Positions 6,261-50,191 of a DNA stretch of 54,382 nt are shown here, piece after piece. Origin of the DNA: Octopus bimaculoides (lineage: Eukaryota); the NCBI RefSeq assembly GCF_001194135.2, contig NC_069005.1, positions 26,270,246 through 26,324,627 of the forward strand, read 5' to 3'. Under the pieces are notes generated by a model, which was not told the origin of the DNA, searched no databases, and worked only from the letters and a program-made list of their open reading frames with translations. Positions within the stretch are counted from its first letter, which is position 1. The number at the start of each line of letters is the position of its first letter. The position numbers were made by a program, and so were the translations under genes.

Positions 6261-8092
6261 CAAAAATGTTTTGAAGGAAACAAAAGTGAAGATCTATGCA
6301 GAAACGACTAAACTACTCTGAAGATCAAATTATAAACGTTTCTGAACAATACAACAACAACAAAAAAAGACCAACTTTTCATTTCAAAGTAAATCGTTTT
6401 CAAAGCAGAAACAGGAACAACTCACAAAGAGATAGAAATACATGGAAAAGAGAAAATTTCACAAGCTACTATGAACATACACACACACACATACACACAC
6501 CACACACACACACGCCCACNNNNNNNNNNNNNNNNNNNNNNNNNNNNNNNNNNNNNNNNNNNNNNNNNNNNNNNNNNNNNNNNNNNNNNNNNNNNNNNNN
6601 NATATGTATGTGCATATATATGTATGTATGTGCATATATATGTATGTATGTGCATATATATGTATGTATGTATATATATATATATATATATGTATGTATA
6701 TATATGTGTATATATATGTATGTATGTGTATATATATATATATATATATACACATACAGGTGGGGGGGAGAGAAACAGATATATAGACACTCATAACCCA
6801 AACCACGCCTATATTCGTACATACAAACACACACACATACCCACACACGTACATACACACAAACCGACACATTCACGCACTCACACACTCACACATATGC
6901 AAGAAAATGCGTGCACGCACACACCCGCACACAAAGCCACACACACATACACATGCACACAAATAGTCACATTCACACACATCCTTCTTTTATTATTATT
7001 TTTCTCCGGACATTGTACTCATTACATAACCTCCAGACGTTTCACCAATGTTTCCACTTTACAATTTATTTTATGCTTTTTTTTTTTTCATTAAGTATTA
7101 TGTTTTTCGTCCGTGTTTATTTCTCCAATTCCACATTCTTCTTTCTTCCCTTCCACCTCACACACGCACCTGCCAAATCCTCACCNNNNNNNNNNNNNNN
7201 NNNNNNNNNNNNNNNNNNNNNNNNNNNNNNNNNNNNNNNNNNNNNNNNNNNNNNNNNNNNNNNNNNNNNNNNNNNNNNNNNNNNNNNNNNNNNNNNNNNN
7301 NNNNNNNNNNNNNNNNNNNNNNNNNNNNNNNNNNNNNNNNNNNNNNNNNNNNNNNNNNNNNNNNNNNNNNNNNNNNNNNNNNNNNNNNNNNNNNNNNNNN
7401 NNNNNNNNNNNNNNNNNNNNNNNNNNNNNNNNNNNNNNNNNNNNNNNNNNNNNNNNNNNNNNNNNNNNNNNNNNNNNNNNNNNNNNNNNNNNNNNNNNNN
7501 NNNNNNNNNNNNNNNNNNNNNNNNNNNNNNNNNNNNNNNNNNNNNNNNNNNNNNNNNNNNNNNNNNNNNNNNNNNNNNNNNNNNNNNNNNNNNNNNNNNN
7601 NNNNNNNNNNNNNNNNNNNNNNNNNNNNNNNNNNNNNNNNNNNNNNNNNNNNNNNNNNNNNNNNNNNNNNNNNNNNNNNNNNNNNNNNNNNNNNNNNNNN
7701 NNNNNNNNNNNNNNNNNNNNNNNNNNNNNNNNNNNNNNNNNNNNNNNNNNNNNNNNNNNNNNNNNNNNNNNNNNNNNNNNNNNNNNNNNNNNNNNNNNNN
7801 NNNNNNNNNNNNNNNNNNNNNNNNNNNNNNNNNNNNNNNNNNNNNNNNNNNNNNNNNNNNNNNNNNNNNNNNNNNNNNNNNNNNNNNNNNNNNNNNNNNN
7901 NNNNNNNNNNNNNNNNNNNNNNNNNNNNNNNNNNNNNNNNNNNNNNNNNNNNNNNNNNNNNNNNNNNNNNNNNNNNNNNNNNNNNNNNNNNNNNNNNNNN
8001 NNNNNNNNNNNNNNNNNNNNNNNNNNNNNNNNNNNNNNNNNNNNNNNNNNNNNNNNNNNNNNNNNNNNNNNNNTATATATATGTATATATGA

Positions 8093-10114: not shown

Positions 10115-10351
10115 CTTTTATTTTATTTTTTTACTTGTTACTCAGTCATTAGGCTGCGGCAATGCCGGGGCGTCGCCTTCAAAAACTTTTAGTCTACTGA
10201 ATCGACACTCAGTAGTATTTTTTTTTTTTCTTTTTAGAGCCTAGCACTTATACTATCGATCTCCTCTACCGAACCGCTAGTTTACGAGGACGTAAACACA
10301 CCAACACCGGTTGTCAAGCAGTGATGCCGGGACAAACACAGACGCAAAGAC
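10115..10351 (-). mobile_element. Family B SINE 3' half
   Basis: Matches 30386-30590. A plus-strand head fragment of the same family follows at 10412-10445. Confidence 0.8.
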
Positions 10352-11018
10352 CCCGTCTCATATATATATATATATATATATATAATTCAAAGGTAAAAAA
10401 ACAACAAGTGTCTTAGGCAAGTGTCTTCTACTATAGCCTCAGGGGCTTANNNNNNNNNNNNNNNNNNNNNNNNNNNNNNNNNNNNNNNNNNNNNNNNNNN
10501 NNNNNNNNNNNNNNNNNNNNNNNNNNNNNNNNNNNNNNNNNNNNNNNNNNNNNNNNNNNNNNNNNNNNNNNNNNNNNNNNNNNNNNNNNNNNNNNNNNNN
10601 NNNNNNNNNNNNNNNNNNNNNNNNNNNNNNNNNNNNNNNNNNNNNNNNNNNNNNNNNNNNNNNNNNNNNNNNNNNNNNNNNNNNNNNNNNNNNNNNNNNN
10701 NNNNNNNNNNNNNNNNNNNNNNNNNNNNNNNNNNNNNNNNNNNNNNNNNNNNNNNNNNNNNNNNNNNNNNNNNNNNNNNNNNNNNNNNNNNNNNNNNNNN
10801 NNNNNNNNNNNNNNNNNNNNNNNNNNNNNNNNNNNNNNNNNNNNNNNNNNNNNNNNNNNNNNNNNNNNNNNNNNNNNNNNNNNNNNNNNNNNNNNNNNNN
10901 NNNNNNNNNNNNNNNNNNNNNNNNNNNNNNNNNNNNNNNNNNNNNNNNNNNNNNNNNNNNNNNNNNNNNNNNNNNNNNNNNNNNNNNNNNNNNNNNNNNN
11001 NNNNNNNNNNNNNNNNNN

Positions 11019-11247: not shown

Positions 11248-12057
11248 ATGTCACTTAATCTTGTTACTCACAAGTTGTCTGCTCTATATGAAGCCGAAAA
11301 TCATCAGAAGAAAGTTAAGAATTATTTCGAATGCCATGATTTTAGAAGTGATGATCGTCTGACTTTGGTCAATTGGATGTTAGCTTGCGTCGATCGTTAC
11401 AAGGCATCTAAGGAAGTCTTTCACTTGGCTGTTTCATTATTTGATTTATTCATGTCTTGCAAAAAATTACCACGGATTTCCATAGAAAAACTGCAATGCA
11501 TCGCGACATGCTGTCTCTCGGTTTCATTCGAAATGGTATACAAAGGGAAAACGTCTGATGCGCAGGAGCTTGTGAATTTGGTGTCAAGCGTCGACCCCGA
11601 GTCGACAAAAGAACAGCTTAAAATGGTACGCAGTTTGATCTCTGAACATTTCAATATTAGGAAATTAATTATTACTCCGTATACTTTCTTTAATTACTTC
11701 CGCGTTATTCTCAAATTAAAACCGACCCACGACTTGTATTGTATAACCAATTATATATTAGAACTATCACATTATGATGACATCATTTGTGTGAGATCTC
11801 AATACAAACCGAGCCTTATAGCGACAGCTGCTATCCACACAGGACTAATAGCTTTGAAGCTTCATTACGAATGGCTTTCTGATTTATCAGTTCTAACTCC
11901 CTACACTGGAGAAGAGAAAGAGTTAATACTTCTTCATAAGCGTATGTTGGAGTTACTCAAAGCAGCTTCTAAAGAAACGAAATATAGTTCAGCGCAAGCA
12001 AGATACTATAGAGAAGAAAACAACTGTGTTGCTCAGATTGACTATTCAAACGTTTAA
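11248..12057 (+). CDS. Intronless divergent A/B-type cyclin-fold protein (269 aa; N- and C-terminal cyclin boxes)
   Basis: DRLTLVNWML ~ MRAILVDWL; YKASKEVFHLAVSLFDLFMS ~ YKLQNETLHLAVNYIDRFLS; KLQCIATCCL ~ KLQLVGTAAM; YILELS and YKPSLIATAA ~ FLGELS and YLPSVIAGAA of the second cyclin box. ACAATG start context, in-frame TAA upstream at 11170-11172, AATAAA at 12056-12061. Confidence 0.9.
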   Translation: MSLNLVTHKLSALYEAENHQKKVKNYFECHDFRSDDRLTLVNWMLACVDRYKASKEVFHLAVSLFDLFMSCKKLPRISIEKLQCIATCCLSVSFEMVYKGKTSDAQELVNLVSSVDPESTKEQLKMVRSLISEHFNIRKLIITPYTFFNYFRVILKLKPTHDLYCITNYILELSHYDDIICVRSQYKPSLIATAAIHTGLIALKLHYEWLSDLSVLTPYTGEEKELILLHKRMLELLKAASKETKYSSAQARYYREENNCVAQIDYSNV

Positions 12058-25404: not shown

Positions 25405-26639
25405 GTAATGATAATGATAATAGAGGTCTCATCAAAAATATAGTTTAAAATGTATAAATAAAAAATTAAAATAAACCAATCCAATCTCTGAAATGAAGGT
25501 AATAATTTGTAGAAAAAGAAAGGAAAATCTCATAAAATATAAAGAAAACATAAAATCGAAAAACATAAAATGAAAATAGAAACTACTTGCCAGAAATAAT
25601 TTAAAAGGAATTTATATAAAATATGAAAATAAAAAAAAAAGGAACCAAAAAGAATTTCGAAATTGAAACGAATGGTTGCCACAGCGGTAAAAAGTTGACG
25701 TACAATAATTCTGATTCTCATTTGGCTATAAATAAGTATATTCAATACATTATTTAGTCCACGTTAGATGAACTCATATCGAGATTTATCGATTTCCGGA
25801 AGTGAGAAATGAGAAGTGAAAATATCTGAAGGGGATGGGAAGAAGTAATAAGTGTAATGGCGATTTGAGAATAGCAAAGCAAAGAAATTTGTTTGAATGA
25901 GATTATAAATGAAATCTAACTCCATAAAATGAAATCTTAACAAATTCTATAAAAGCAGCCTCAATCGCCACCAACCGCCATCACCATCGACTTTTTATGT
26001 ATATTTTTATTTTAAAGCAGTGTAATTTCAGTCAGTCAAGTAATTTAGCTAAAATTTCATTCAACTAGTGTGGATAGCTGTTGTCGTCTGCTTGTTCCAA
26101 AGAGATTCAAAATGGCGACCAATCTACAAATGTCAAACTGGCGAAAGTTTTGCGCGAGTGAAAAGTGAACTGTATACTACGGAAAAATGAAGCGGAATAG
26201 AATATGAAACGCTATGTTCCAGTTGAAAGGAATGCTTTCAAAACTGTTTTCAAGTCTGTATGTTTTATATGCACACATATACTCGGGCACACTTAAACAT
26301 ATACATGTATTAGGATGCGCATACAAATATATATATACACACACACAGACCCAGTCGCATCTAAATTCACTTACACACTTACACAACTACAGACATAAAC
26401 ACACATATACCCATGTATGTGTACATATACATATTGCAAAAGCAACGAAAATTTTGCAAGAAAAAATATAAATAATAAATGAGTGGAAACTGAACCGGTG
26501 CGTGTGACACATATTAAGGTATTATGAGAGTATAATTCTCCCCAGGCACTACAAAATTTGCTTCAATACACGAATTCACATAAAGAATCTTGCAAGCCAG
26601 ATACAAAAACGAAGTATATATATATATATATATATTTTA

Positions 26640-26905
26640 AGCATGTAAACTAGAGTCAGGTTCTTTCCTTGGCTCGTGTTTACACGCTAATCCGGCACTC
26701 TGCTGACGAAAGCTCCCGAGTTAGATATATTTTTATCTTGCTAAATAGCTTGAAACCATGGTACAGAGTATAGACTGGTAAAAATGTTTTTATTTTTCAT
26801 TCTCTTTCGAAATTATCCCTATTTTTGTGGGATAGAGTTTTTTGCTGCTCTTTCTAGCGGGTTAGATGTCCTATTATAGGCATCTCTATATTTTAAATGA
26901 ATTAT
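26640..26905 (+). mobile_element. (TA)n-flanked Penelope pLTR-like fragment carrying a hammerhead
   Basis: About 265 nt of unique sequence bounded by (TA)n on both sides, containing the 26697-26769 ribozyme motif. Confidence 0.6.
26697..26769 (+). ncRNA. Minimal type I hammerhead ribozyme motif (best-preserved copy)
   Basis: Stem I ACTCTG/CAGAGT perfect, CTGACGA 26703-26709, stem II AAGCT/AGCTT perfect with inner AGATA/TATCT, GAAA 26752-26755, palindromic stem III ACCATGGT, GUA triplet ending at 26763. Confidence 0.88.
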
Positions 26906-26940
26906 ATATATATACATATATATATATATATAAATATATA

Positions 26941-27347
26941 GTGGACATATGTCTAGAAGACCCAAAGAGTGGCAGGTATTGCTAAATAAGTGCTAAGGAC
27001 AGACCATAGTTAAACTCTCGGTCCGATAGTGATACGAGTGAGGACTTTAATATGGGTCTTGTATTAGCAAGACCCATTTTGTCTAATATATATCTGTAGG
27101 AAGAGCCATTTTAACGATGCGTCTGCCCTAACTCTTCGAAACGCCCGTGTTAGAATGGTGGCAGCTGATGAAGGAAAATGTTCTCTATGTGGCCTGTGTG
27201 TTTTCTATACTCTGGTTATTATTATTTTTTTTGTCTACGTTTTGTTTGCAACGTCCTGTACCCAGATATGAACCTATATATACAGGTAGATGTAGGTATG
27301 CACATACTTGTACGTATATATGCATATACTCATTTATTATTTGTTTT
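26941..27347. mobile_element. Unclassified (TA)n-flanked interspersed repeat
   Basis: Bounded by (TA)n. Its terminal ~36 nt (27311-27347) recur with 1 mismatch at 18373-18410, also abutting (TA)n. Confidence 0.5.
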
Positions 27348-29160: not shown

Positions 29161-29673
29161 ATATGACGATAACTATTACTCTGGAATAAATACAAAATAG
29201 ATTAAGTCCCCTACAAACGAATAATGGATACAACCATCAAAGAGACGTCTGTATATGAATGTGTGAATGTGTGTATGCGCGCGCGCGTGTGCGTGCGTGT
29301 GTATGTGCATGCATGTGTTTGAGTGTGTACTTTCATGTAATTGTGTGTGTATGTGAGTGTGTGTGTGTGAGAGAGCGAGAGAGAGAGAGAGAGCGTGTTT
29401 GTATAGATATATATGTATATATTTATATATAATAAAAGGGTAAAATCAATAATGATTTTACCAGGTAATGCGGAAATAAAAACCTCCTAGGTAAATTTTA
29501 TAAAATATTTTATAATTATTTTCATAATTATAACAAGGGATCGGTTTTACGCCTCACCATGCACTGCAAGAAATAGAAGCTAAAAGCCACTATAACTACC
29601 TTAAAATCTCCGAGAACAACACACTATACTGCAGGCAAGCAAAAGAAAAATAATGAATCAACGAGGCTGGTTA

Positions 29674-29746
29674 ACTGTGTATACGATCAAATTTCAAACT
29701 TAAAGTAAAAATGAAATATTTTACTTACTGCTTTCATCAGCACAGT
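29674..29746 (-). ncRNA. Type I hammerhead ribozyme motif, minus-strand arm of inverted repeat
   Basis: Minus strand reads ACTGTG-CTGATGA-AAGC...GTTT-GAAA-TTTGATCGTATA-CACAGT. Stem I perfect; AUA triplet with N17 at 29680. Confidence 0.72.
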
Positions 29747-29846
29747 ACTCCATAAGATAAATTCATGAGTATCGCAAAATATACACAAACGATCAAGCGA
29801 CATCGTATGCATATTTTGAGATACTCGTGAATTTATCTCATGGAGT

Positions 29847-29919
29847 ACTGTGCTGATGAAAGCAGGAGGTAAAATATTTCATTTTTACTTTAAGTTTGAA
29901 ATTCGATTGTGTACACAGT
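29847..29919 (+). ncRNA. Type I hammerhead ribozyme motif, plus-strand arm of inverted repeat
   Basis: ACTGTG-CTGATGA(29853-29859)-AAGC...GTTT-GAAA(29898-29901)-TTCGATTGTGTA-CACAGT. Stem I perfect; GUA triplet ending at 29913; stem III imperfect. Confidence 0.72.
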
Positions 29920-30013
29920 TAACCAGCCTTGTTGATTCTTTATTTTTCCTTTGCTTGCCTGCAGTATAGTGTATATAAGTTTGACGCTCGGAAAGAATAA
30001 AGGAATCTTTGAC

Positions 30014-30248
30014 GCACCTTGGAAAGTCTCTTCTAGTAGAGCCTCTTTGGTAGACGGAAACTGAAAGAAGCTTGACATATATATATATGTGTGCGTGTGT
30101 GTGTATGTATGTATATGTATATATATATATATATATATATCTGTGTGTGTGTCTTTGTGTCTGTGTTTGTCCCCCACCAACACTTGACAATCGGTACTGG
30201 TGTGTTAACGTCCCCGTAAATTAGAGGTTCAGCAAAAGAGACCGATAC
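30014..30248 (+). mobile_element. Family B SINE, internal portion
   Basis: 30046-30071 is the exact reverse complement of 30634-30659. Confidence 0.85.
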
Positions 30249-30385: not shown

Positions 30386-30783
30386 TTCTCTTTTACTCTT
30401 TTACTTGTTTCAGTCATTTGACTGTGGCCATGCTGGAGCACCGCCTTTAGTCGAGCAAATCAACGCCAGGACTTATTCTTTGTAAGCCTAGTACTTATTC
30501 TATCGATCTCTTTTGCCGAACCGCTATGTTACGGGGACGTAAACACACCAGCATCGGTTGTCAAGCGATGTTGGGGGGACAGACACAAACACATACACAC
30601 ACATACATATATATATATACATATATACGACGGGCTTCTTTCAGTTTCCGTCTACCAAATCCACTCACAAGGCTTTGGTCGGCCTGAGGCTATGGTAGAA
30701 GACACTTACCCAAGGTGCCACGCAGTGGGACTGAGCCCGGAACCATGTGGTTGGTAAGCAAGCTACTTACCACACAGCCACTC
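30386..30783 (-). mobile_element. tRNA-derived SINE family B, full length, with internal microsatellite
   Basis: Head GAGTGGCTGTGTGGTAAGTAG (A-box), GGCTCAGTCCC (B-box-like), CCTTGGGTAAGTGTCTTCTAC, internal (TA)/(TG) tract, and 3' tail GACTGAAACAAGTAAAAGAGTAAAAGAG. Confidence 0.92.
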
Positions 30784-32220
30784 ATATATATATATATACC
30801 ACAAAAGCACGGACATACAAAATTGCATATATAACTATATAACTTGGGATGGTCACGAGTGCGAGGTGTTTGATCATAGAGTCAGCTCGATTAGACCGCC
30901 GTGGGAAGGGGACTAAATGCCTACACTGTGTCGTCTGCCACAAACACCTTTACGACGACGACCACCACCACCACCACCATCATCATCGTCGTCGTGTCCA
31001 TTGTCGTCTGCATCGTCGTCTGCATCGTCGTCTCCATCGTCGTCGTCGTCGTCTTTGCCATTTGCAATATATATCTTCATCTGTTATCCAAGATATTACA
31101 CGTAGCTGTCACATCTTCATCTCATCTTCAATCCATTTATTGCCCATCTCAGTCACGTCTGTTTATGCTAATTTCTTATCAACCGACATCATCTATCTAC
31201 TCTTAGTCACACTACAACAGCTTTTCGCTAAGCTTGCAAATACATGCACAAAGTACATACACACATACATACATACATACATACATACATACATACATAC
31301 ATGCAAACATACATACATACATACATACATACATGCAAACATACATACATGCATGCAAAAATACATACATACATTCATACACATGCACACACACACACAC
31401 ACACCCGTACATACATACATACNNNNNNNNNNNNNNNNNNNNNNNNNNNNNNNNNNNNNNNNNNNNNNNNNNNNNNNNNNNNNNNNNNNNNNNNNNNNNN
31501 NNNNNNNNNNNNNNNNNNNNNNNNNNNNNNNNNNNNNNNNNNNNNNNNNNNNNNNNNNNNNNNNNNNNNNNNNNNNNNNNNNNNNNNNNNNNNNNNNNNN
31601 NNNNNNNNNNNNNNNNNNNNNNNNNNNNNNNNNNNNNNNNNNNNNNNNNNNNNNNNNNNNNNNNNNNNNNNNNNNNNNNNNNNNNNNNNNNNNNNNNNNN
31701 NNNNNNNNNNNNNNNNNNNNNNNNNNNNNNNNNNNNNNNNNNNNNNNNNNNNNNNNNNNNNNNNNNNNNNNNNNNNNNNNNNNNNNNNNNNNNNNNNNNN
31801 NNNNNNNNNNNNNNNNNNNNNNNNNNNNNNNNNNNNNNNNNNNNNNNNNNNNNNNNNNNNNNNNNNNNNNNNNNNNNNNNNNNNNNNNNNNNNNNNNNNN
31901 NNNNNNNNNNNNNNNNNNNNNNNNNNNNNNNNNNNNNNNNNNNNNNNNNNNNNNNNNNNNNNNNNNNNNNNNNNNNNNNNNNNNNNNNNNNNNNNNNNNN
32001 NNNNNNNNNNNNNNNNNNNNNNNNNNNNNNNNNNNNNNNNNNNNNNNNNNNNNNNNNNNNNNNNNNNNNNNNNNNNNNNNNNNTTTCTTTCTTTCTTTCT
32101 TTTTTTCATTCTTTCTTTCTTTTTTTCATTCTTTCTTTCTTTCTGTTTGTACGTGTGCGGTTACTTCATGTCTGCCTATTCATATAAACACACCCACAAA
32201 CGCACACACGTATGTGTGTC

Positions 32221-32612: not shown

Positions 32613-34023
32613 TAAAAGTATATTTATGTGCATGTCTGCATGAATATATGTATGTACGCATGTAGGTGTGTGTGTGTTTGTGTGTGTGTGTTTGTGTGTG
32701 TGTTTGTGTGTGTGTTTGTGTGTGTGTGTTTGTGTGTGTGTGTTTGTGTTTGTGTGTGTGCCTGTGTGTGTCAAAATGGCTGCATGGATGACGAGAAATC
32801 TAACAAAACTTATTGCAGTGAGCGCCAAAAGCAATTGAACATTCTCTGGCACTTCCATTGCAGCAGCACACCGCCCCCTGGAGGGATCAATATTGTCTAA
32901 AAGGATCGAAATTGTTGTGATCACCAGCCGGAAGCTGATGGTCCCGTAATGCAAGCTTCATGTAAAATGCAATATAATATAATATAATATAATATAATAT
33001 AATATAATATAATATAATATACAATGATGGCGGTTTCTTCTTGTCCGACAACCATGAAGAAGAGCGGCACGCCTTCAAGTGGCTATGCAAGCCAATTCTT
33101 AACGCTGCGGGGCCTCTCTTCCTGCTCGAGCTTAGTAAAGATGTAATCGACTTATCCCCTCTCCCAGCCCCACCTTGATGGCTTTGTGTCAAAGTTTGAA
33201 ACCAATATTTTCAGGCAAAAAAATGTTATTCTGTGCGATGTTACGTACGTCACACGTTTTGGCTCCTCTTCATGCATTTCATTCGATGGGTGAATCCTGG
33301 ATTGGCTTCACAGGATTATAGATATTTTACCGATCGAACATCGGAGACAGTTACAATAAATACGGCAGCAGAAACGTGCGTCGGACACATTGAAATCAAA
33401 TGTGCTGAATGATTGAACTGTGAAAATGAAAAATATGAAGATGTACTCAATCTCCCTATTCATTGTAATTGTCTTACACACAAGCACACACAAATATACA
33501 TACATACATACATACATACATACATACATACATANNNNNNNNNNATATATATATATATATATATGTATGAAAGTATATATGTATGTGTATATATATATAT
33601 AATATATATGTATGTATTTATATTTGTATGAATGTGTCTGTGCCTACGTGTGTGTGTCTGTATAGATATAGATATATACATACATGCAGTCATACAGACG
33701 GACGGACGGACAGATAGACATAATTTATATTTTCTAAAGAGATGAGTCACCGCTGTCAATGCAAATTTGCAATTTCTCATGAAAACTTCGATTAGTTTTT
33801 TGACACATTTCACGTGTTATCCAGCCTGTCACTTCAATGATGTACTTTAAAACCTGAAGTGTTTTGCGTTTTCTGTTGGGTTTTCTGCCAATCAGCCGCA
33901 CAATTTCTAATTCTATGCATTCCTCTTAATTCTAAGATATTTTGAATTCTTCGCAATACCTATGAACAAAGAAGAAATTAAACAAAATATTAAATATTAG
34001 TTTTGCTTTTTGTTGTCTTTTAT

Positions 34024-34200
34024 TTTTTACTCGTTTCACCTATTGGACTGCGGCCATGTTGGGGCGCCGCACTGATAGGTTCAGTCGAGCAAATCGACTC
34101 CAGTATATATGAATTTTTTTTTTAAGTCTGGTACTCTGTCGTTTTCCTTTTACTGAATCGCTAGGTTACGGGAACTTGAACACACCAACATCCGTGACAA
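34024..34200 (-). mobile_element. Family B SINE 3' half, diverged
   Basis: GGACTGCGGCCATGTTGGGGCG...AGTCGAGCAAATCGAC. Confidence 0.7.
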
Positions 34201-34622
34201 ACGCAAATACGATACACACACACACATACATACATACATACATACGTACATACATACATACATACATACATACATACATACATACATACATACGTACATA
34301 CACAATGGCGCCGTCAACATCAGTCGTGCAGGTATAGAGGACCGTTTAAAAAGTCCGTTTTGAACGCCTTCCTCTAGAAATATGCCGACTTCTCCAGCCT
34401 AAATTGGTAACTGGTTTATTTCTCCAATAATTAATAAGAGAAACACCTTTTGCTCAACAACGTAGCGTTACCTTGAACAGATTTTAAAATATACATCTAC
34501 ACCACGTGGAATCTCGCTAAACCGATTGCGCTAGCCACCATTTTATCTTCTTTTATTCTATTCAAGTTTTTTGGTTTTTTAAAAATCTTTTACGCATCTT
34601 TATTTTTTTGAATACCCTTGTG

Positions 34623-36202
34623 ATGGCTTCAAAAAGAAAGAATTCTGAGATGCAAAGCAAGGATAAGATGAAACGTAAATCAATTACTTTAGAAATGAAA
34701 TACGAATTGATTAAACAACACGAAAAATGGTGCAACTGTTAAAGATTTACCTAAACGTTTGATATGGTTCCTTTATCTGTTTGTGCCATCTTGAAGCAAA
34801 AGGAAGTTTATTTAAATAAAGTTGAAGGAAGTCACTCTCTAAGTTCAACTTCGTTACGAAGAAAAGATAATGAAAGTTTAATTTCACGCAGAGAAATGCC
34901 TTTGACAGCTTGGATTAACGATTAAAACGCCGTGCTTTAAATGGAATTGATAAGATGAATTTTCCTGTAATCTGGAAGCATAACAAAAAGAGCTTGGGTG
35001 ACAGGAACTCTATTTGAAGATTGGTTTTCTAATCACTTTGTTCCCGAAGCAGAAAATATTGTAAGGATCAAAAAATTCCTTTCAAAATTCTTTTGATAAT
35101 GGATAATGCCGCCAGTCATGCTGCAATTTTAAACCATCACCATCAAAATATTAATGTTTTTTTTTTACCTCCCAATACAACATCTTTAGGGCTGCCTTAT
35201 GAATCAAGGATCCATTTTCATCGTTTAAATCTTACTATCTTCGTTTCACCTTTGGAAGACTCATCGAAGTAACCGATAAAGAAAATGGTCCTACGATTCG
35301 AGAATTTTGGAAGAGTTTCAACATCCTTGGTGCTATAAAATTGATAAAGAAAGCATGGGATAAAATCACCGTAAAGAACATGAAAGGAATTTGGAGAAAT
35401 CTCTGTCCCAAATTAATTGAAAAATTTGAAGGATTTGATAATCTTTATGAAGGTCTTCAAAAAGAAACTGACACAATCATAAACATTGCAATGGAATTGA
35501 ATTTTGAAATTTCACCTGAAGATGTTAAAGAAGTTTTTTTATGCTGACAGTAATGATATCACATATGGAGAATTGCTAGAAATGGAAAAGTTTGAACGTA
35601 AAGAAGAAGAAGAAGAAGAAGAAGAAAATGAAGAATCGCCTGAAAGATGCTGCTCTGCAAAAACGCTAAATGCAGCATTTCTTCACATCGAAAAAGCAAT
35701 TGAAATCTTTGAGTAGCAAGATGCTGATTTTGAAAGAAGCTCAACTGTTGCTGCAAATTTAATAAGAGGTCATGCTTGTCATCATGAAATCTACCGTGAA
35801 ATGAAGAAGAAATCTGTTCAACAAACAACTTGAGATCATTTTTTAACGACGAAAACTAATGCGCACCAAACATGAAAACAAGAAGAAACTCAACAAATAG
35901 AATTGGCATACGCTCAAGAGTCCCCAGTGACGACAGACTCGATGGATACGAATAAAATTTCATGGGTTGAATTTTTTTGTTTTATGTTTTTCTGGGGTTT
36001 TTTTTTTTCATTTTGTAGTTTATGATTTAATTAAAAAATTAAACTCTTGAATATTGCTATTTTTATCTTTACCTTTTTTTTAGATTTTAGAAAGTTTAAG
36101 AATCCACTTCTTTCGTGGAAACCAATTAAAGGTGTATTCATTGTTTTCTATGGACGATAATACCTCACTATACGAATTTTTCACTTTACAAATCTAGTCA
36201 GG
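34623..36202 (+). mobile_element. pogo/Tigger (CENP-B HTH + DDE_1) transposase remnant
   Basis: KRKSITLEMKYELIKQHEK, LIMDNAASHA, FLPPNTTSL, IKKAWDKITVKNMKGIWRNLCP and an acidic tail. Multiple frameshifts. Confidence 0.85.
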
Positions 36203-49536: not shown

Positions 49537-50191
49537 TACTCTTTTACTTGTTTCAGTCATTTGACTGCGGCCATGCTGGAGCACCGGCTTTAGTCGAGCA
49601 AATCGACCACAGGACTTATTCTTTGTAAGCCTAGTACTTATTCTATCGGTCCTCTTTTGCCGAACCGCCAGATTACGGGGACTTAAACACACCAGCATCG
49701 GTTGTCAAGAGATGGTGGGGGGACAAACACAGACACACAAACACAGACACACAAACACACACACACACACACNNNNNNNNNNNNNNNNNNNNNNNNNNNN
49801 NNNNNNNNNNNNNNNNNNNNNNNNNNNNNNNNNNNNNNNNNNNNNNNNNNNNNNNNNNNNNNNNNNNNNNNNNNNNNNNNNNNNNNNNNNNNNNNNNNNN
49901 NNNNNNNNNNNNNNNNNNNNNNNNNNNNNNNNNNNNNNNNNNNNNNNNNNNNNNNNNNNNNNNNNNNNNNNNNNNNNNNNNNNNNNNNNNNNNNNNNNNN
50001 NNNNNNNNNNNNNNNNNNNNNNNNNNNNNNNNNNNNNNNNNNNNNNNNNNNNNNNNNNNNNNNNNNNNNNNNNNNNNNNNNNNNNNNNNNNNNNNNNNNN
50101 NNNNNNNNNNNNNNNNNNNNNNNNNNNGTAGTGGGACTGAACCCGGAATCACATGGTTGCACGTTAAGCTTGTTAACCAGGCAGCCATGCC
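49537..50191 (-). mobile_element. Family B SINE spanning an assembly gap
   Basis: Tail at 49537-49740 and head at 50128-50191, with the gap starting in the internal (CA)n. Confidence 0.85.

What the first reader, a model, noticed from the sequence alone, without database searches (positions are those of the whole stretch)
29621..29972. 352-nt palindrome carrying two hammerhead ribozymes of opposite polarity
Seen: two 162-nt arms (11 mismatches, no indels) around a 28-nt spacer that adds a further 5-bp stem. Each arm holds a complete type I hammerhead core with a perfect 6-bp stem I, one on + (29847-29919) and one on - (29674-29746), placed symmetrically. Established: Penelope-like elements carry hammerheads in their pLTRs and can have inverted pLTRs; viroid-like RNAs use ribozymes in both polarities. 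Inference: any transcript through the locus, in either direction, contains one sense ribozyme plus its own antisense copy. It must either fold the ribozyme or form a ~160-bp rod that silences it. This could be an inverted-pLTR by-product or a non-autonomous ambisense retrozyme-like unit.
Basis: partly seen in the sequence, partly recalled or inferred. Interest (0 to 1): 0.9.

Follow-up and report, generated by a model that had tools for sequence, protein, structure and literature searches.

The report
Inverted hammerhead retroelement relic in octopus
The 352-base palindrome with a hammerhead-ribozyme motif on each strand is real, but it is most likely an old, decaying pair of truncated Penelope-type retroelement ends inserted head to head, an arrangement already known, and not a new ambisense ribozyme unit.

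Summary
Arms 29621-29785 and 29808-29972 are 93% complementary. Each carries a complete type I hammerhead core with a perfect 6-bp stem I, on + at 29847-29919 and on - at 29674-29746.

The motif is not chance. A third, related hammerhead lies at 26697-26769, giving 3 motifs against 0.08 expected. That third one matches Rfam Hammerhead_1 end to end at 22.2 bits, below the threshold of 34.

The exciting reading is not supported.
- The palindrome's own hammerheads match no Rfam hammerhead model. They have A10.1-U11.1 instead of G-C, and a weak helix III.
- The rod fold (-247 kcal/mol) beats the ribozyme fold by about 90 kcal/mol.
- The sense ribozyme is always in the 3' arm, so it is made after its antisense copy.
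- Each strand has only one cleavage site, so no unit can be excised or circularised.
- The arms differ at 12 sites in a neutral pattern: 9 transitions, 5 at CpG, and no sparing of the ribozyme.

The arms lie 5' ends together and 3' ends outward. Penelope-like elements make exactly this arrangement, and their enzyme primes reverse transcription on both target strands.

Whether the palindrome recurs across the genome could not be tested with these tools.

The parts
29621..29785 (-). Left arm. It is a 5'-truncated copy of the hammerhead-bearing element, sense on the minus strand. Its 3' end is at 29621 (outer) and its 5' end is towards the centre.
   Evidence: Inverted repeat I1; arm alignment; orientation follows from the hammerhead polarity.
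29674..29746 (-). Type I hammerhead motif on the minus strand: ACUGUG-CUGAUGA-helix II (38 nt)-GAAA-UUUGAUCGUA-UA|CACAGU. The predicted cut lies between the complements of 29680 and 29679.
   Evidence: Motif scan; pattern search; the fold shows stems I and II.
29786..29807 (.). Central spacer, CAAACGATCAAGCGACATCGTA. It is partly symmetric once 2-nt indels are allowed, so the true loop is only a few bases.
   Evidence: a central 5-bp stem appears in the folds.
29808..29972 (+). Right arm. It is the same 5'-truncated copy, sense on the plus strand, with its 3' end at 29972 (outer).
29847..29919 (+). Type I hammerhead motif on the plus strand. The predicted cut is after A29913.
   Evidence: no Rfam hammerhead hit.
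26697..26769 (+). Third, related hammerhead (HHR3). It shares ACUSUG-CUGAYGA-AAGC...GYUU-GAAA with the palindrome copies. Stem I carries a compensatory G-C to C-G change. Helix III is the palindromic CCAUGG.
   Evidence: Rfam Hammerhead_1, full length 1-45/45, 22.2 bits, E=0.0012; alignment; the homodimer fold forms an extended helix III.
26637..26902 (+). A unit of about 266 nt carrying HHR3. It is bounded on both sides by (TA)n-type microsatellite (26617-26636 and about 26903-26945).
   Evidence: Sequence; the boundaries are inferred from the microsatellite flanks only.

Best explanation
The palindrome is a dead-on-arrival insertion made by Penelope-like element (PLE) machinery. Two cDNA copies of the same 3'-terminal ~165-185 nt of a hammerhead-bearing RNA were laid down in opposite orientation and joined at their truncated 5' ends. 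The template was either a PLE pLTR/3' region or a PLE-dependent non-LTR retrozyme.

The likely route is target-primed reverse transcription from both strands of the cleaved target. A fold-back or strand-switch during the same event is also possible. Either route puts the defined 3' ends outside and the 5' truncation points together at the centre.

Since then the two arms have drifted apart neutrally, by 7% and largely through CpG decay.

The hammerhead is inherited cargo. In any transcript crossing the locus the antisense arm is made first, the ~165-bp hairpin zips up and the ribozyme is sequestered. With only one sense copy per strand, no unit can be excised or circularised.

Shown here: the anatomy, the orientation, the neutral divergence, the energetics and the relatedness to a Hammerhead_1-type motif nearby. 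Inferred: the PLE machinery, the dual-strand priming and the lack of present function.
For: (1) Geometry. The sense strands run outward from the centre, so the 3' ends are outside and the 5' ends meet. Both arms stop at the same outer nucleotide and the flanks beyond are unrelated. Symmetry runs almost to the centre.

(2) Literature on architecture. [quoted passage not shown]

(3) Literature on mechanism. [quoted passage not shown] It starts reverse transcription at defined internal sites and inserts into AT-rich DNA (PMC11167929).

(4) Literature on precedent. Pairs of hammerheads about 100-700 bp apart on opposite strands were already noted in Schistosoma mansoni (PMC4209133).

(5) Hammerhead type. 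Helix I is 6 bp, helix II closes with 4 bp, and helix III is short and near-palindromic. This is the metazoan type I architecture of retrozymes and PLEs.

(6) The related HHR3. It aligns to Rfam Hammerhead_1 over the whole model. It lies in a ~266-nt unit inside a (TA)n microsatellite, a preferred PLE target.

(7) Neutral decay. There are 12 differences in 165 nt: 9 transitions and 3 transversions. Five are at CpG sites, and no CpG is shared by the two arms. Five of the 12 fall in the 73-nt ribozyme, against 5.3 expected.

(8) Energetics. The rod folds at -247 and -246 kcal/mol. Forcing the hammerhead fold costs 88-92 kcal/mol. Even an arm on its own rarely adopts it (P about 1e-8 to 1e-6).
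Against: No PLE reading frame (RT or GIY-YIG) was found near the locus. Stop-free segments of at least 70 aa within about 3 kb gave no such Pfam hit, so the link to PLEs rests on ribozyme type, architecture and literature.

No other copy of the arm was available. I therefore could not show that 29621 and 29972 coincide with the family's canonical 3' end.

The immediate flanks of the palindrome are not (TA)n, and no target-site duplication is visible.

All four arm differences at predicted paired positions keep pairing through wobble. That is weakly suggestive of structural constraint, roughly 1 in 16 by chance.

Dual-strand priming has been shown in vitro for one lizard PLE only.
Confidence: 0.68

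Rival explanations
1. A DNA-level inverted duplication. A single solo hammerhead element (a retrozyme monomer or truncated PLE end) was already there. A replication fork-stalling or template-switch event, or hairpin-capped break repair, later copied about 165 nt of it in reverse. The retroelement enzyme played no part.
For: The very short central loop and near-perfect original symmetry are also typical of fold-back repair products. No target-site duplication is seen. No PLE reading frame is nearby.
Against: A repair event has no reason to stop at an element boundary, yet both arms end at the same nucleotide with unrelated flanks on both sides. If one arm were the original element, it would be expected to continue past the duplicated segment into the rest of the element on one side. 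The head-to-head orientation with 3' ends outward is the one PLEs produce.
Confidence: 0.15
2. A functional or mobile ambisense unit. The palindrome itself would be a recurrent, transcribed element. It could be a switchable ribozyme, a hairpin-RNA source of small RNAs or an RNA-editing substrate, or a retrozyme-like replicon using ribozymes in both polarities.
For: Both cores and both 6-bp stems I are intact, and the four differences at paired positions are wobble-compatible. A ~165-bp hairpin RNA is predicted for both strands. In viroids of the Avsunviroidae, plus- and minus-strand hammerhead sequences also pair with each other (my own knowledge).
Against: Each strand has one cleavage site, so no monomer can be released or circularised. 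There is no tandem repeat and no second copy in 54 kb. Divergence is neutral with CpG decay, and the ribozyme is not spared. An intact core is expected by chance with P about 0.37 (my calculation). Rfam hammerhead models do not report the motif. The 10.1-11.1 pair is A-U. The ribozyme fold is disfavoured by about 90 kcal/mol.
Confidence: 0.06
3. Two independent insertions of the same element family that happened to land head to head.
For: PLE-type elements prefer to insert next to existing copies, and AT-rich sites are reused.
Against: Independent insertions would have independent 5' truncation points. Here the two copies are truncated within a few bases of each other, and the symmetry runs to the centre.
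Confidence: 0.05
4. An assembly artefact, in which an inverted join was created by the assembler.
For: The window is a gap-rich draft with 20 runs of N totalling 8.9 kb. PLE structures are known to trouble short-read assemblies.
Against: The arms differ at 12 sites in a biological pattern. The locus is 4.3 kb from the N-run on its left (ends 25320) and 1.45 kb from the one on its right (starts 31423).
Confidence: 0.02

Closest known systems
Inverted 5'-truncated copies and inverted pLTRs of Penelope-like elements (Evgen'ev and Arkhipova 2005; Craig et al. 2021, PMC8557442)
   Same: Two 5'-truncated copies lie head to head with their 3' ends outward. A hammerhead motif sits near the 3' end. A related unit lies in a (TA)n microsatellite in the same neighbourhood.
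   Different: Both copies here are truncated to about 165 nt. No full-length element, RT/GIY-YIG frame or 30-40-bp 'tail' is present. The link to a specific octopus PLE family was not shown.
Dual hammerheads on opposite strands about 100-700 bp apart in Schistosoma mansoni (Cervera and de la Pena 2014, PMC4209133)
   Same: Two PLE-associated type I hammerheads of opposite polarity lie close together; here there are 100 nt between the motifs.
   Different: That paper mentions such pairs in one sentence, without anatomy. Its motifs are minimal hammerheads without helix III. Here helix III is present, and helix II carries a long extra hairpin.
Metazoan non-LTR retrozymes (Cervera and de la Pena 2020, PMC7229834; Li et al. 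2026 preprint, 10.64898/2026.07.22.740005)
   Same: Both have a type I hammerhead with 6-bp helix I, 4-bp helix II closure and a short palindromic helix III. Both are AT-rich, with a unit size in the 170-400 nt range. Dispersed monomers are common, and the elements derive from PLE pLTRs.
   Different: Retrozymes are direct tandem repeats, so two same-strand ribozymes release a monomer that circularises. Here the copies are inverted and nothing can be released.
Rfam Hammerhead_1 (RF00163)
   Same: The core nucleotides and helix order are the same. The neighbouring HHR3 aligns over the full model, including the loop 2 AAUAG.
   Different: HHR3 scores 22.2 bits, below the gathering score of 34. 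The palindrome copies are not reported at all. Both families have A10.1-U11.1 and an insertion of about 24-28 nt in loop 2.
Ambisense hammerheads of Avsunviroidae viroids and some satellite RNAs (my own knowledge)
   Same: An RNA of one polarity carries its own ribozyme plus the complement of the other strand's ribozyme. The two pair, which suppresses cleavage in the monomer.
   Different: Those are circular, RNA-replicated genomes in which the two ribozymes are distinct sequences. Here there is one DNA-encoded copy and its exact reverse complement, with no route to a circle.

Membership tests
Hammerhead ribozyme, type I | Conserved core C3 U4 G5 A6 N7 G8 A9 / G12 A13 A14 / A15.1-U16.1 / H17, with the open end at helix I | tested here: met
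   All core positions are present in both arms and in HHR3.
Hammerhead ribozyme, type I | Three helices around the core | tested here: inconclusive
   Helices I and II are predicted for the isolated 73-mers. Helix III is 4 bp with a U-U mismatch, and the active fold is rare even in arm-only RNA.
Hammerhead ribozyme, type I | G10.1-C11.1 pair closing helix II | tested here: not met
   The pair is A-U in all three motifs. Cervera and de la Pena list G10.1-C11.1 as highly conserved.
Hammerhead ribozyme, type I | Score at or above the Rfam gathering threshold for a hammerhead model | tested here: not met
   There is no hit at gathering thresholds. The palindrome copies give no hammerhead hit at E<=10. 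HHR3 scores 22.2 bits against 34.
Hammerhead ribozyme, type I | Self-cleavage at the H17 site | not testable with these tools
   This needs in vitro transcription of single arms and of dimeric constructs.
Penelope-like element (pLTR or 3' end) | Physical or sequence link to an RT plus GIY-YIG reading frame | tested here: not met
   No RT or GIY-YIG Pfam hit was found in stop-free segments near the locus. Of the TE-like segments tested elsewhere in the window, only a DDE_1 relic was recognised. This was not a full six-frame scan, and no octopus PLE consensus was available.
Penelope-like element (pLTR or 3' end) | 5'-truncated copies in tandem or inverted (head-to-head) arrangement with a hammerhead near the 3' end | tested here: met
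   The orientation and symmetry fit. The feature is as described in PMC8557442.
Penelope-like element (pLTR or 3' end) | Insertion into AT-rich or (TA)n targets | tested here: inconclusive
   The HHR3 unit is flanked by (TA)n on both sides. The palindrome's immediate flanks are not (TA)n.
Non-LTR retrozyme | At least two direct tandem units, each with a same-strand hammerhead | tested here: not met
   There is one sense motif per strand at the palindrome, HHR3 is solitary, and no tandem array exists.
Non-LTR retrozyme | Expression as small circular RNA | not testable with these tools
   This needs RNA-seq with RNase R treatment or northern blots.
Foldback element or MITE | Multiple genomic copies with the same terminal inverted repeats and target-site duplications | tested here: inconclusive
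   No target-site duplication is visible and there is no other copy in 54 kb. The genome itself could not be searched.

The most novel reading that the evidence does not exclude
The palindrome could be one member of a recurrent octopus family of hammerhead-bearing hairpins. Their read-through transcripts would form ~165-bp double-stranded RNA that feeds small-RNA or A-to-I editing pathways. Transcripts starting at the centre would release free, cleavable ribozymes. That would make it a structure-gated ambisense ribozyme unit. Nothing here excludes this, because genome-wide copy number and expression could not be examined.
Probability: 0.05. Interest if true: 0.75.

Novelty: new member of a known kind. 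Interest (0 to 1): 0.22.

Why it matters
Taken at face value, it is a clean, datable example of the head-to-head insertion products of Penelope-like elements. Both copies are cut down to the ribozyme-bearing 3' end. That fits the recent in vitro finding that a PLE enzyme primes reverse transcription on both target strands.

It also documents an octopus variant of the metazoan type I hammerhead, shared by two diverged families: A10.1-U11.1 and a long hairpin inserted in loop 2. Standard Rfam thresholds miss this variant, so hammerhead counts in cephalopod genomes are probably underestimates.

It does not open a new question about ribozyme biology unless the palindrome turns out to be recurrent and expressed.

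Tried and rejected
(1) Other copies in the window. BLASTN with word size 7 and mismatch-tolerant pattern searches found none beyond the two arms and HHR3.

(2) Other copies found through proteins. Translations of the arm reading frames found no candidate. Ten window ORFs are absent from the protein collection, so this genome is represented only by its annotated genes.

(3) The orthologous site in Octopus vulgaris. The cyclin-B2-like gene gave locus L002, but the 10-kb flank limit only reaches the equivalent of window position ~12.3 kb.

(4) Sampling related genomes through a LINE fragment. Loci L003 and L004 (ENA ERZ26692694) share no DNA similarity with the window and hold no hammerheads.

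(5) Pattern scans of public collections. Metagenome contigs (two scans), bacterial and archaeal genomes, and viral contigs gave 0 matches.

(6) Homology beyond the palindrome. The flanks are not related to each other or to the HHR3 unit. Only TTTATTTTTC, at the same offset after the ribozyme, is shared, and that is not significant.

(7) A covariance model from the three motifs. I abandoned this because the MAFFT alignment puts the helix II partners in different columns.

(8) A six-frame Pfam scan by DNA reference.

(9) The miRNA-family hits. I rejected these as generic long-hairpin matches; all are far below their gathering scores.

Full report
**Where the window comes from.** An intronless cyclin-like ORF at 11248-12057 is encoded, identically, on chromosome CM046625.1 of NCBI assembly GCA_001194135.2. 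From memory, that assembly is Octopus bimaculoides. The closest named homologue is 'cyclin-B2-1-like [Octopus vulgaris]' at 90% identity. Window position 1 corresponds to record position 26,270,246, so the palindrome is at 26,299,866-26,300,217. The window is AT-rich and full of microsatellites. It holds 20 runs of N, 8.9 kb in all.

**Checking the observation.** The inverted repeat is real. The arms are 29621-29785 and 29808-29972: 165 nt, 93% complementary, 22 nt apart. With two 2-nt indels the symmetry continues nearly to the centre.

Each arm carries ACUGUG-CUGAUGA-(38 nt)-GAAA-(10 nt)-UA|CACAGU. That is a complete type I hammerhead core with a perfect 6-bp stem I, at 29847-29919 (+) and 29674-29746 (-). 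The predicted cuts are after 29913 (+) and after the complement of 29680 (-).

My descriptor finds three motifs in the window against 0.08 expected from shuffles. A family-specific pattern finds three against 0.00 expected.

**A third hammerhead.** The third motif is at 26697-26769 (+), 3 kb upstream. It shares ACUSUG-CUGAYGA-AAGC...GYUU-GAAA with the palindrome copies. It differs by a compensatory change in stem I (G-C to C-G), a different distal helix II, and the classic palindromic helix III, CCAUGG.

Searched on its own, it aligns to Rfam Hammerhead_1 over the full model, including the loop 2 AAUAG. The score is 22.2 bits (E = 0.0012), below the gathering score of 34 because of a 28-nt insertion in loop 2. 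Its homodimer is predicted to form the extended intermolecular helix III of dimeric metazoan hammerheads. It sits in a unit of about 266 nt bounded on both sides by (TA)n microsatellite. So hammerhead-bearing retroelement debris of the metazoan type I kind is present in this genome, and the palindrome's motifs are diverged relatives of it.

**How good the palindrome's ribozymes are.**
- They have every core nucleotide, but the 10.1-11.1 pair is A-U. Cervera and de la Pena list G10.1-C11.1 as highly conserved.
- Helix III is 4 bp with a U-U mismatch.
- No Rfam hammerhead model reports them, even at E<=10 in an 85-nt search. The miRNA-family hits are generic long-hairpin matches far below threshold.
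- The isolated 73-mers fold with helices I and II as required.
- In a 176-nt arm-only RNA, conformations compatible with the hammerhead make up only about 1e-8 to 1e-6 of the ensemble.
- In the full palindrome both strands fold into a rod of -247 and -246 kcal/mol. Forcing the ribozyme fold costs 88-92 kcal/mol.

**Geometry and its consequences.** The sense strands of the two copies run outward from the centre. This has two consequences.

First, in a transcript crossing the locus in either direction, the sense ribozyme lies in the 3' arm. Its antisense partner is already made when the ribozyme emerges. I infer that the hairpin zips up from the loop and sequesters the ribozyme during transcription.

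Second, each strand has exactly one cleavage site. No unit can be excised, and the self-cleavage-plus-ligation route to circular RNA used by retrozymes and viroid-like RNAs is closed. There is no tandem direct repeat and no other copy of the arm in the window.

**Evolution of the arms.** The arms differ at 12 of 165 positions: 9 transitions and 3 transversions. Five differences are at CpG sites, and none of the five CpGs present in either arm is shared by both. That is the signature of DNA-level decay after duplication.

Five of the 12 differences fall in the 73-nt ribozyme, against 5.3 expected, so the ribozyme has not been spared. That none hits the 13 core positions is unremarkable; I calculate P of about 0.37. 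The four differences at predicted paired positions all keep pairing through wobble. This is a weak hint of constraint, roughly 1 in 16 by chance, and I record it as evidence against my reading.

Orthologous non-coding DNA of the O. vulgaris assembly is 88-92% identical to the window. The 7% divergence between the arms therefore puts the event on the same timescale as the split of these two octopus lineages. The structure is old.

**What made it.** The arrangement has three features: 5' ends together, 3' ends outside, and both arms stopping at the same nucleotide with unrelated flanks beyond. This is the one described for Penelope-like elements. [quoted passage not shown] It starts reverse transcription at defined internal sites of its RNA (PMC11167929). 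Two cDNAs primed from the two strands of one target, both started at the same site on the template and joined after about 165-185 nt, would give exactly this palindrome.

Hammerhead pairs about 100-700 bp apart on opposite strands were already noted in Schistosoma (PMC4209133). Animal retrozymes are now argued to be non-autonomous derivatives of PLE pLTRs, with many dispersed monomers (10.64898/2026.07.22.740005).

I therefore read the palindrome as a dead-on-arrival PLE-type double insertion. The template was either a PLE end or a retrozyme RNA.

**What I could not show.**
- No RT or GIY-YIG frame was found near the locus. The PLE link rests on ribozyme type, architecture and literature.
The searchable DNA collections hold no cephalopod genome and gave 0 matches.
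- The protein route failed.
- The O. vulgaris locus I could fetch stops about 17 kb short of the orthologous site.
- Other loci fetched through a LINE fragment belong to an unrelated organism.

**Verdict.** The structure is best explained as a known by-product of Penelope-type integration that has been decaying neutrally. The ambisense retrozyme-like reading fails on anatomy: there is one cut per strand, no tandem repeat, a sequestered ribozyme and no selection. It can only be rescued by showing that the intact palindrome is recurrent and expressed.

Two points are of modest interest. One is the octopus variant of the type I hammerhead (A10.1-U11.1 and a long loop 2 hairpin), which standard Rfam thresholds miss. 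The other is the neat fit to the dual-strand priming seen in vitro.

Noticed in passing
window 26637-26902 (hammerhead at 26697-26769, +): A solitary unit of about 266 nt with a canonical-looking type I hammerhead. It matches Rfam Hammerhead_1 over the full model at 22.2 bits, below threshold. It has a palindromic CCAUGG helix III and a 28-nt insertion in loop 2, and it is embedded in a (TA)n microsatellite. It is probably a retrozyme or PLE-end monomer.
   Followed up: partly
window 11248-12057 (+): An intronless 269-aa ORF with Cyclin_N and Cyclin_C domains, annotated as a gene in the source assembly. An O. vulgaris counterpart (174 aa, 'cyclin-B2-1-like') is 90% identical, and a Logan transcript-like contig encodes an 80% identical protein. 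It may be a retrogene or a single-exon cyclin.
   Followed up: partly
window 30386-30783 (+); also 30046-30247 (-), 49541-49763, 15623-15881, 10115-10384, 34013-34301: A SINE-like repeat of about 400 nt occurs in many copies in the window and in the O. vulgaris locus L002, at 80-90% identity. Two copies lie in inverted orientation just to the right of the palindrome (repeat I2).
   Followed up: partly
window 35033-35544 (+): A relic of a pogo/Tigger-type DDE transposase (Pfam DDE_1, E = 5e-8 and 9e-6), split over two frames.
   Followed up: partly
window 22861-23178 (+) and 24445-24714 (+): Two fragments look like non-LTR reverse transcriptase, for example ...IFQGDSLSPLLF.... Pfam gave no hit. 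The second fragment finds 107 homologues at up to 75% identity in ENA and JGI 'metagenome' assemblies. Some of these are on contigs of 0.5-1.9 Mb, which must be eukaryotic DNA inside those assemblies.
   Followed up: partly
window 23391-23783 (-): A 131-aa cysteine-rich ORF (...CRFCKAFKFPNETNGMCCSGGKV...) that recalls the N-terminal region of Helitron-type proteins. It has no Pfam hit and is not in the protein collection.
   Followed up: no
window, 20 runs of N (e.g. 1063-1923, 7186-8073, 13167-14152, 31423-32083): 8.9 kb of the 54.4-kb window is assembly gap, mostly next to microsatellites. Distances in the window, and any repeat counts, are therefore approximate.
   Followed up: yes
window 29920-29972 versus 29847-29863: In arm-only RNA the 3' terminal ~20 nt of the arm (GCUUGCCUGCAGUAUAGUGU) is predicted to pair with the 5' half of the hammerhead (ACUGUGCUG...AAAGC), which competes with the ribozyme fold. 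This may be chance, or a built-in alternative structure of the element's 3' end.
   Followed up: no
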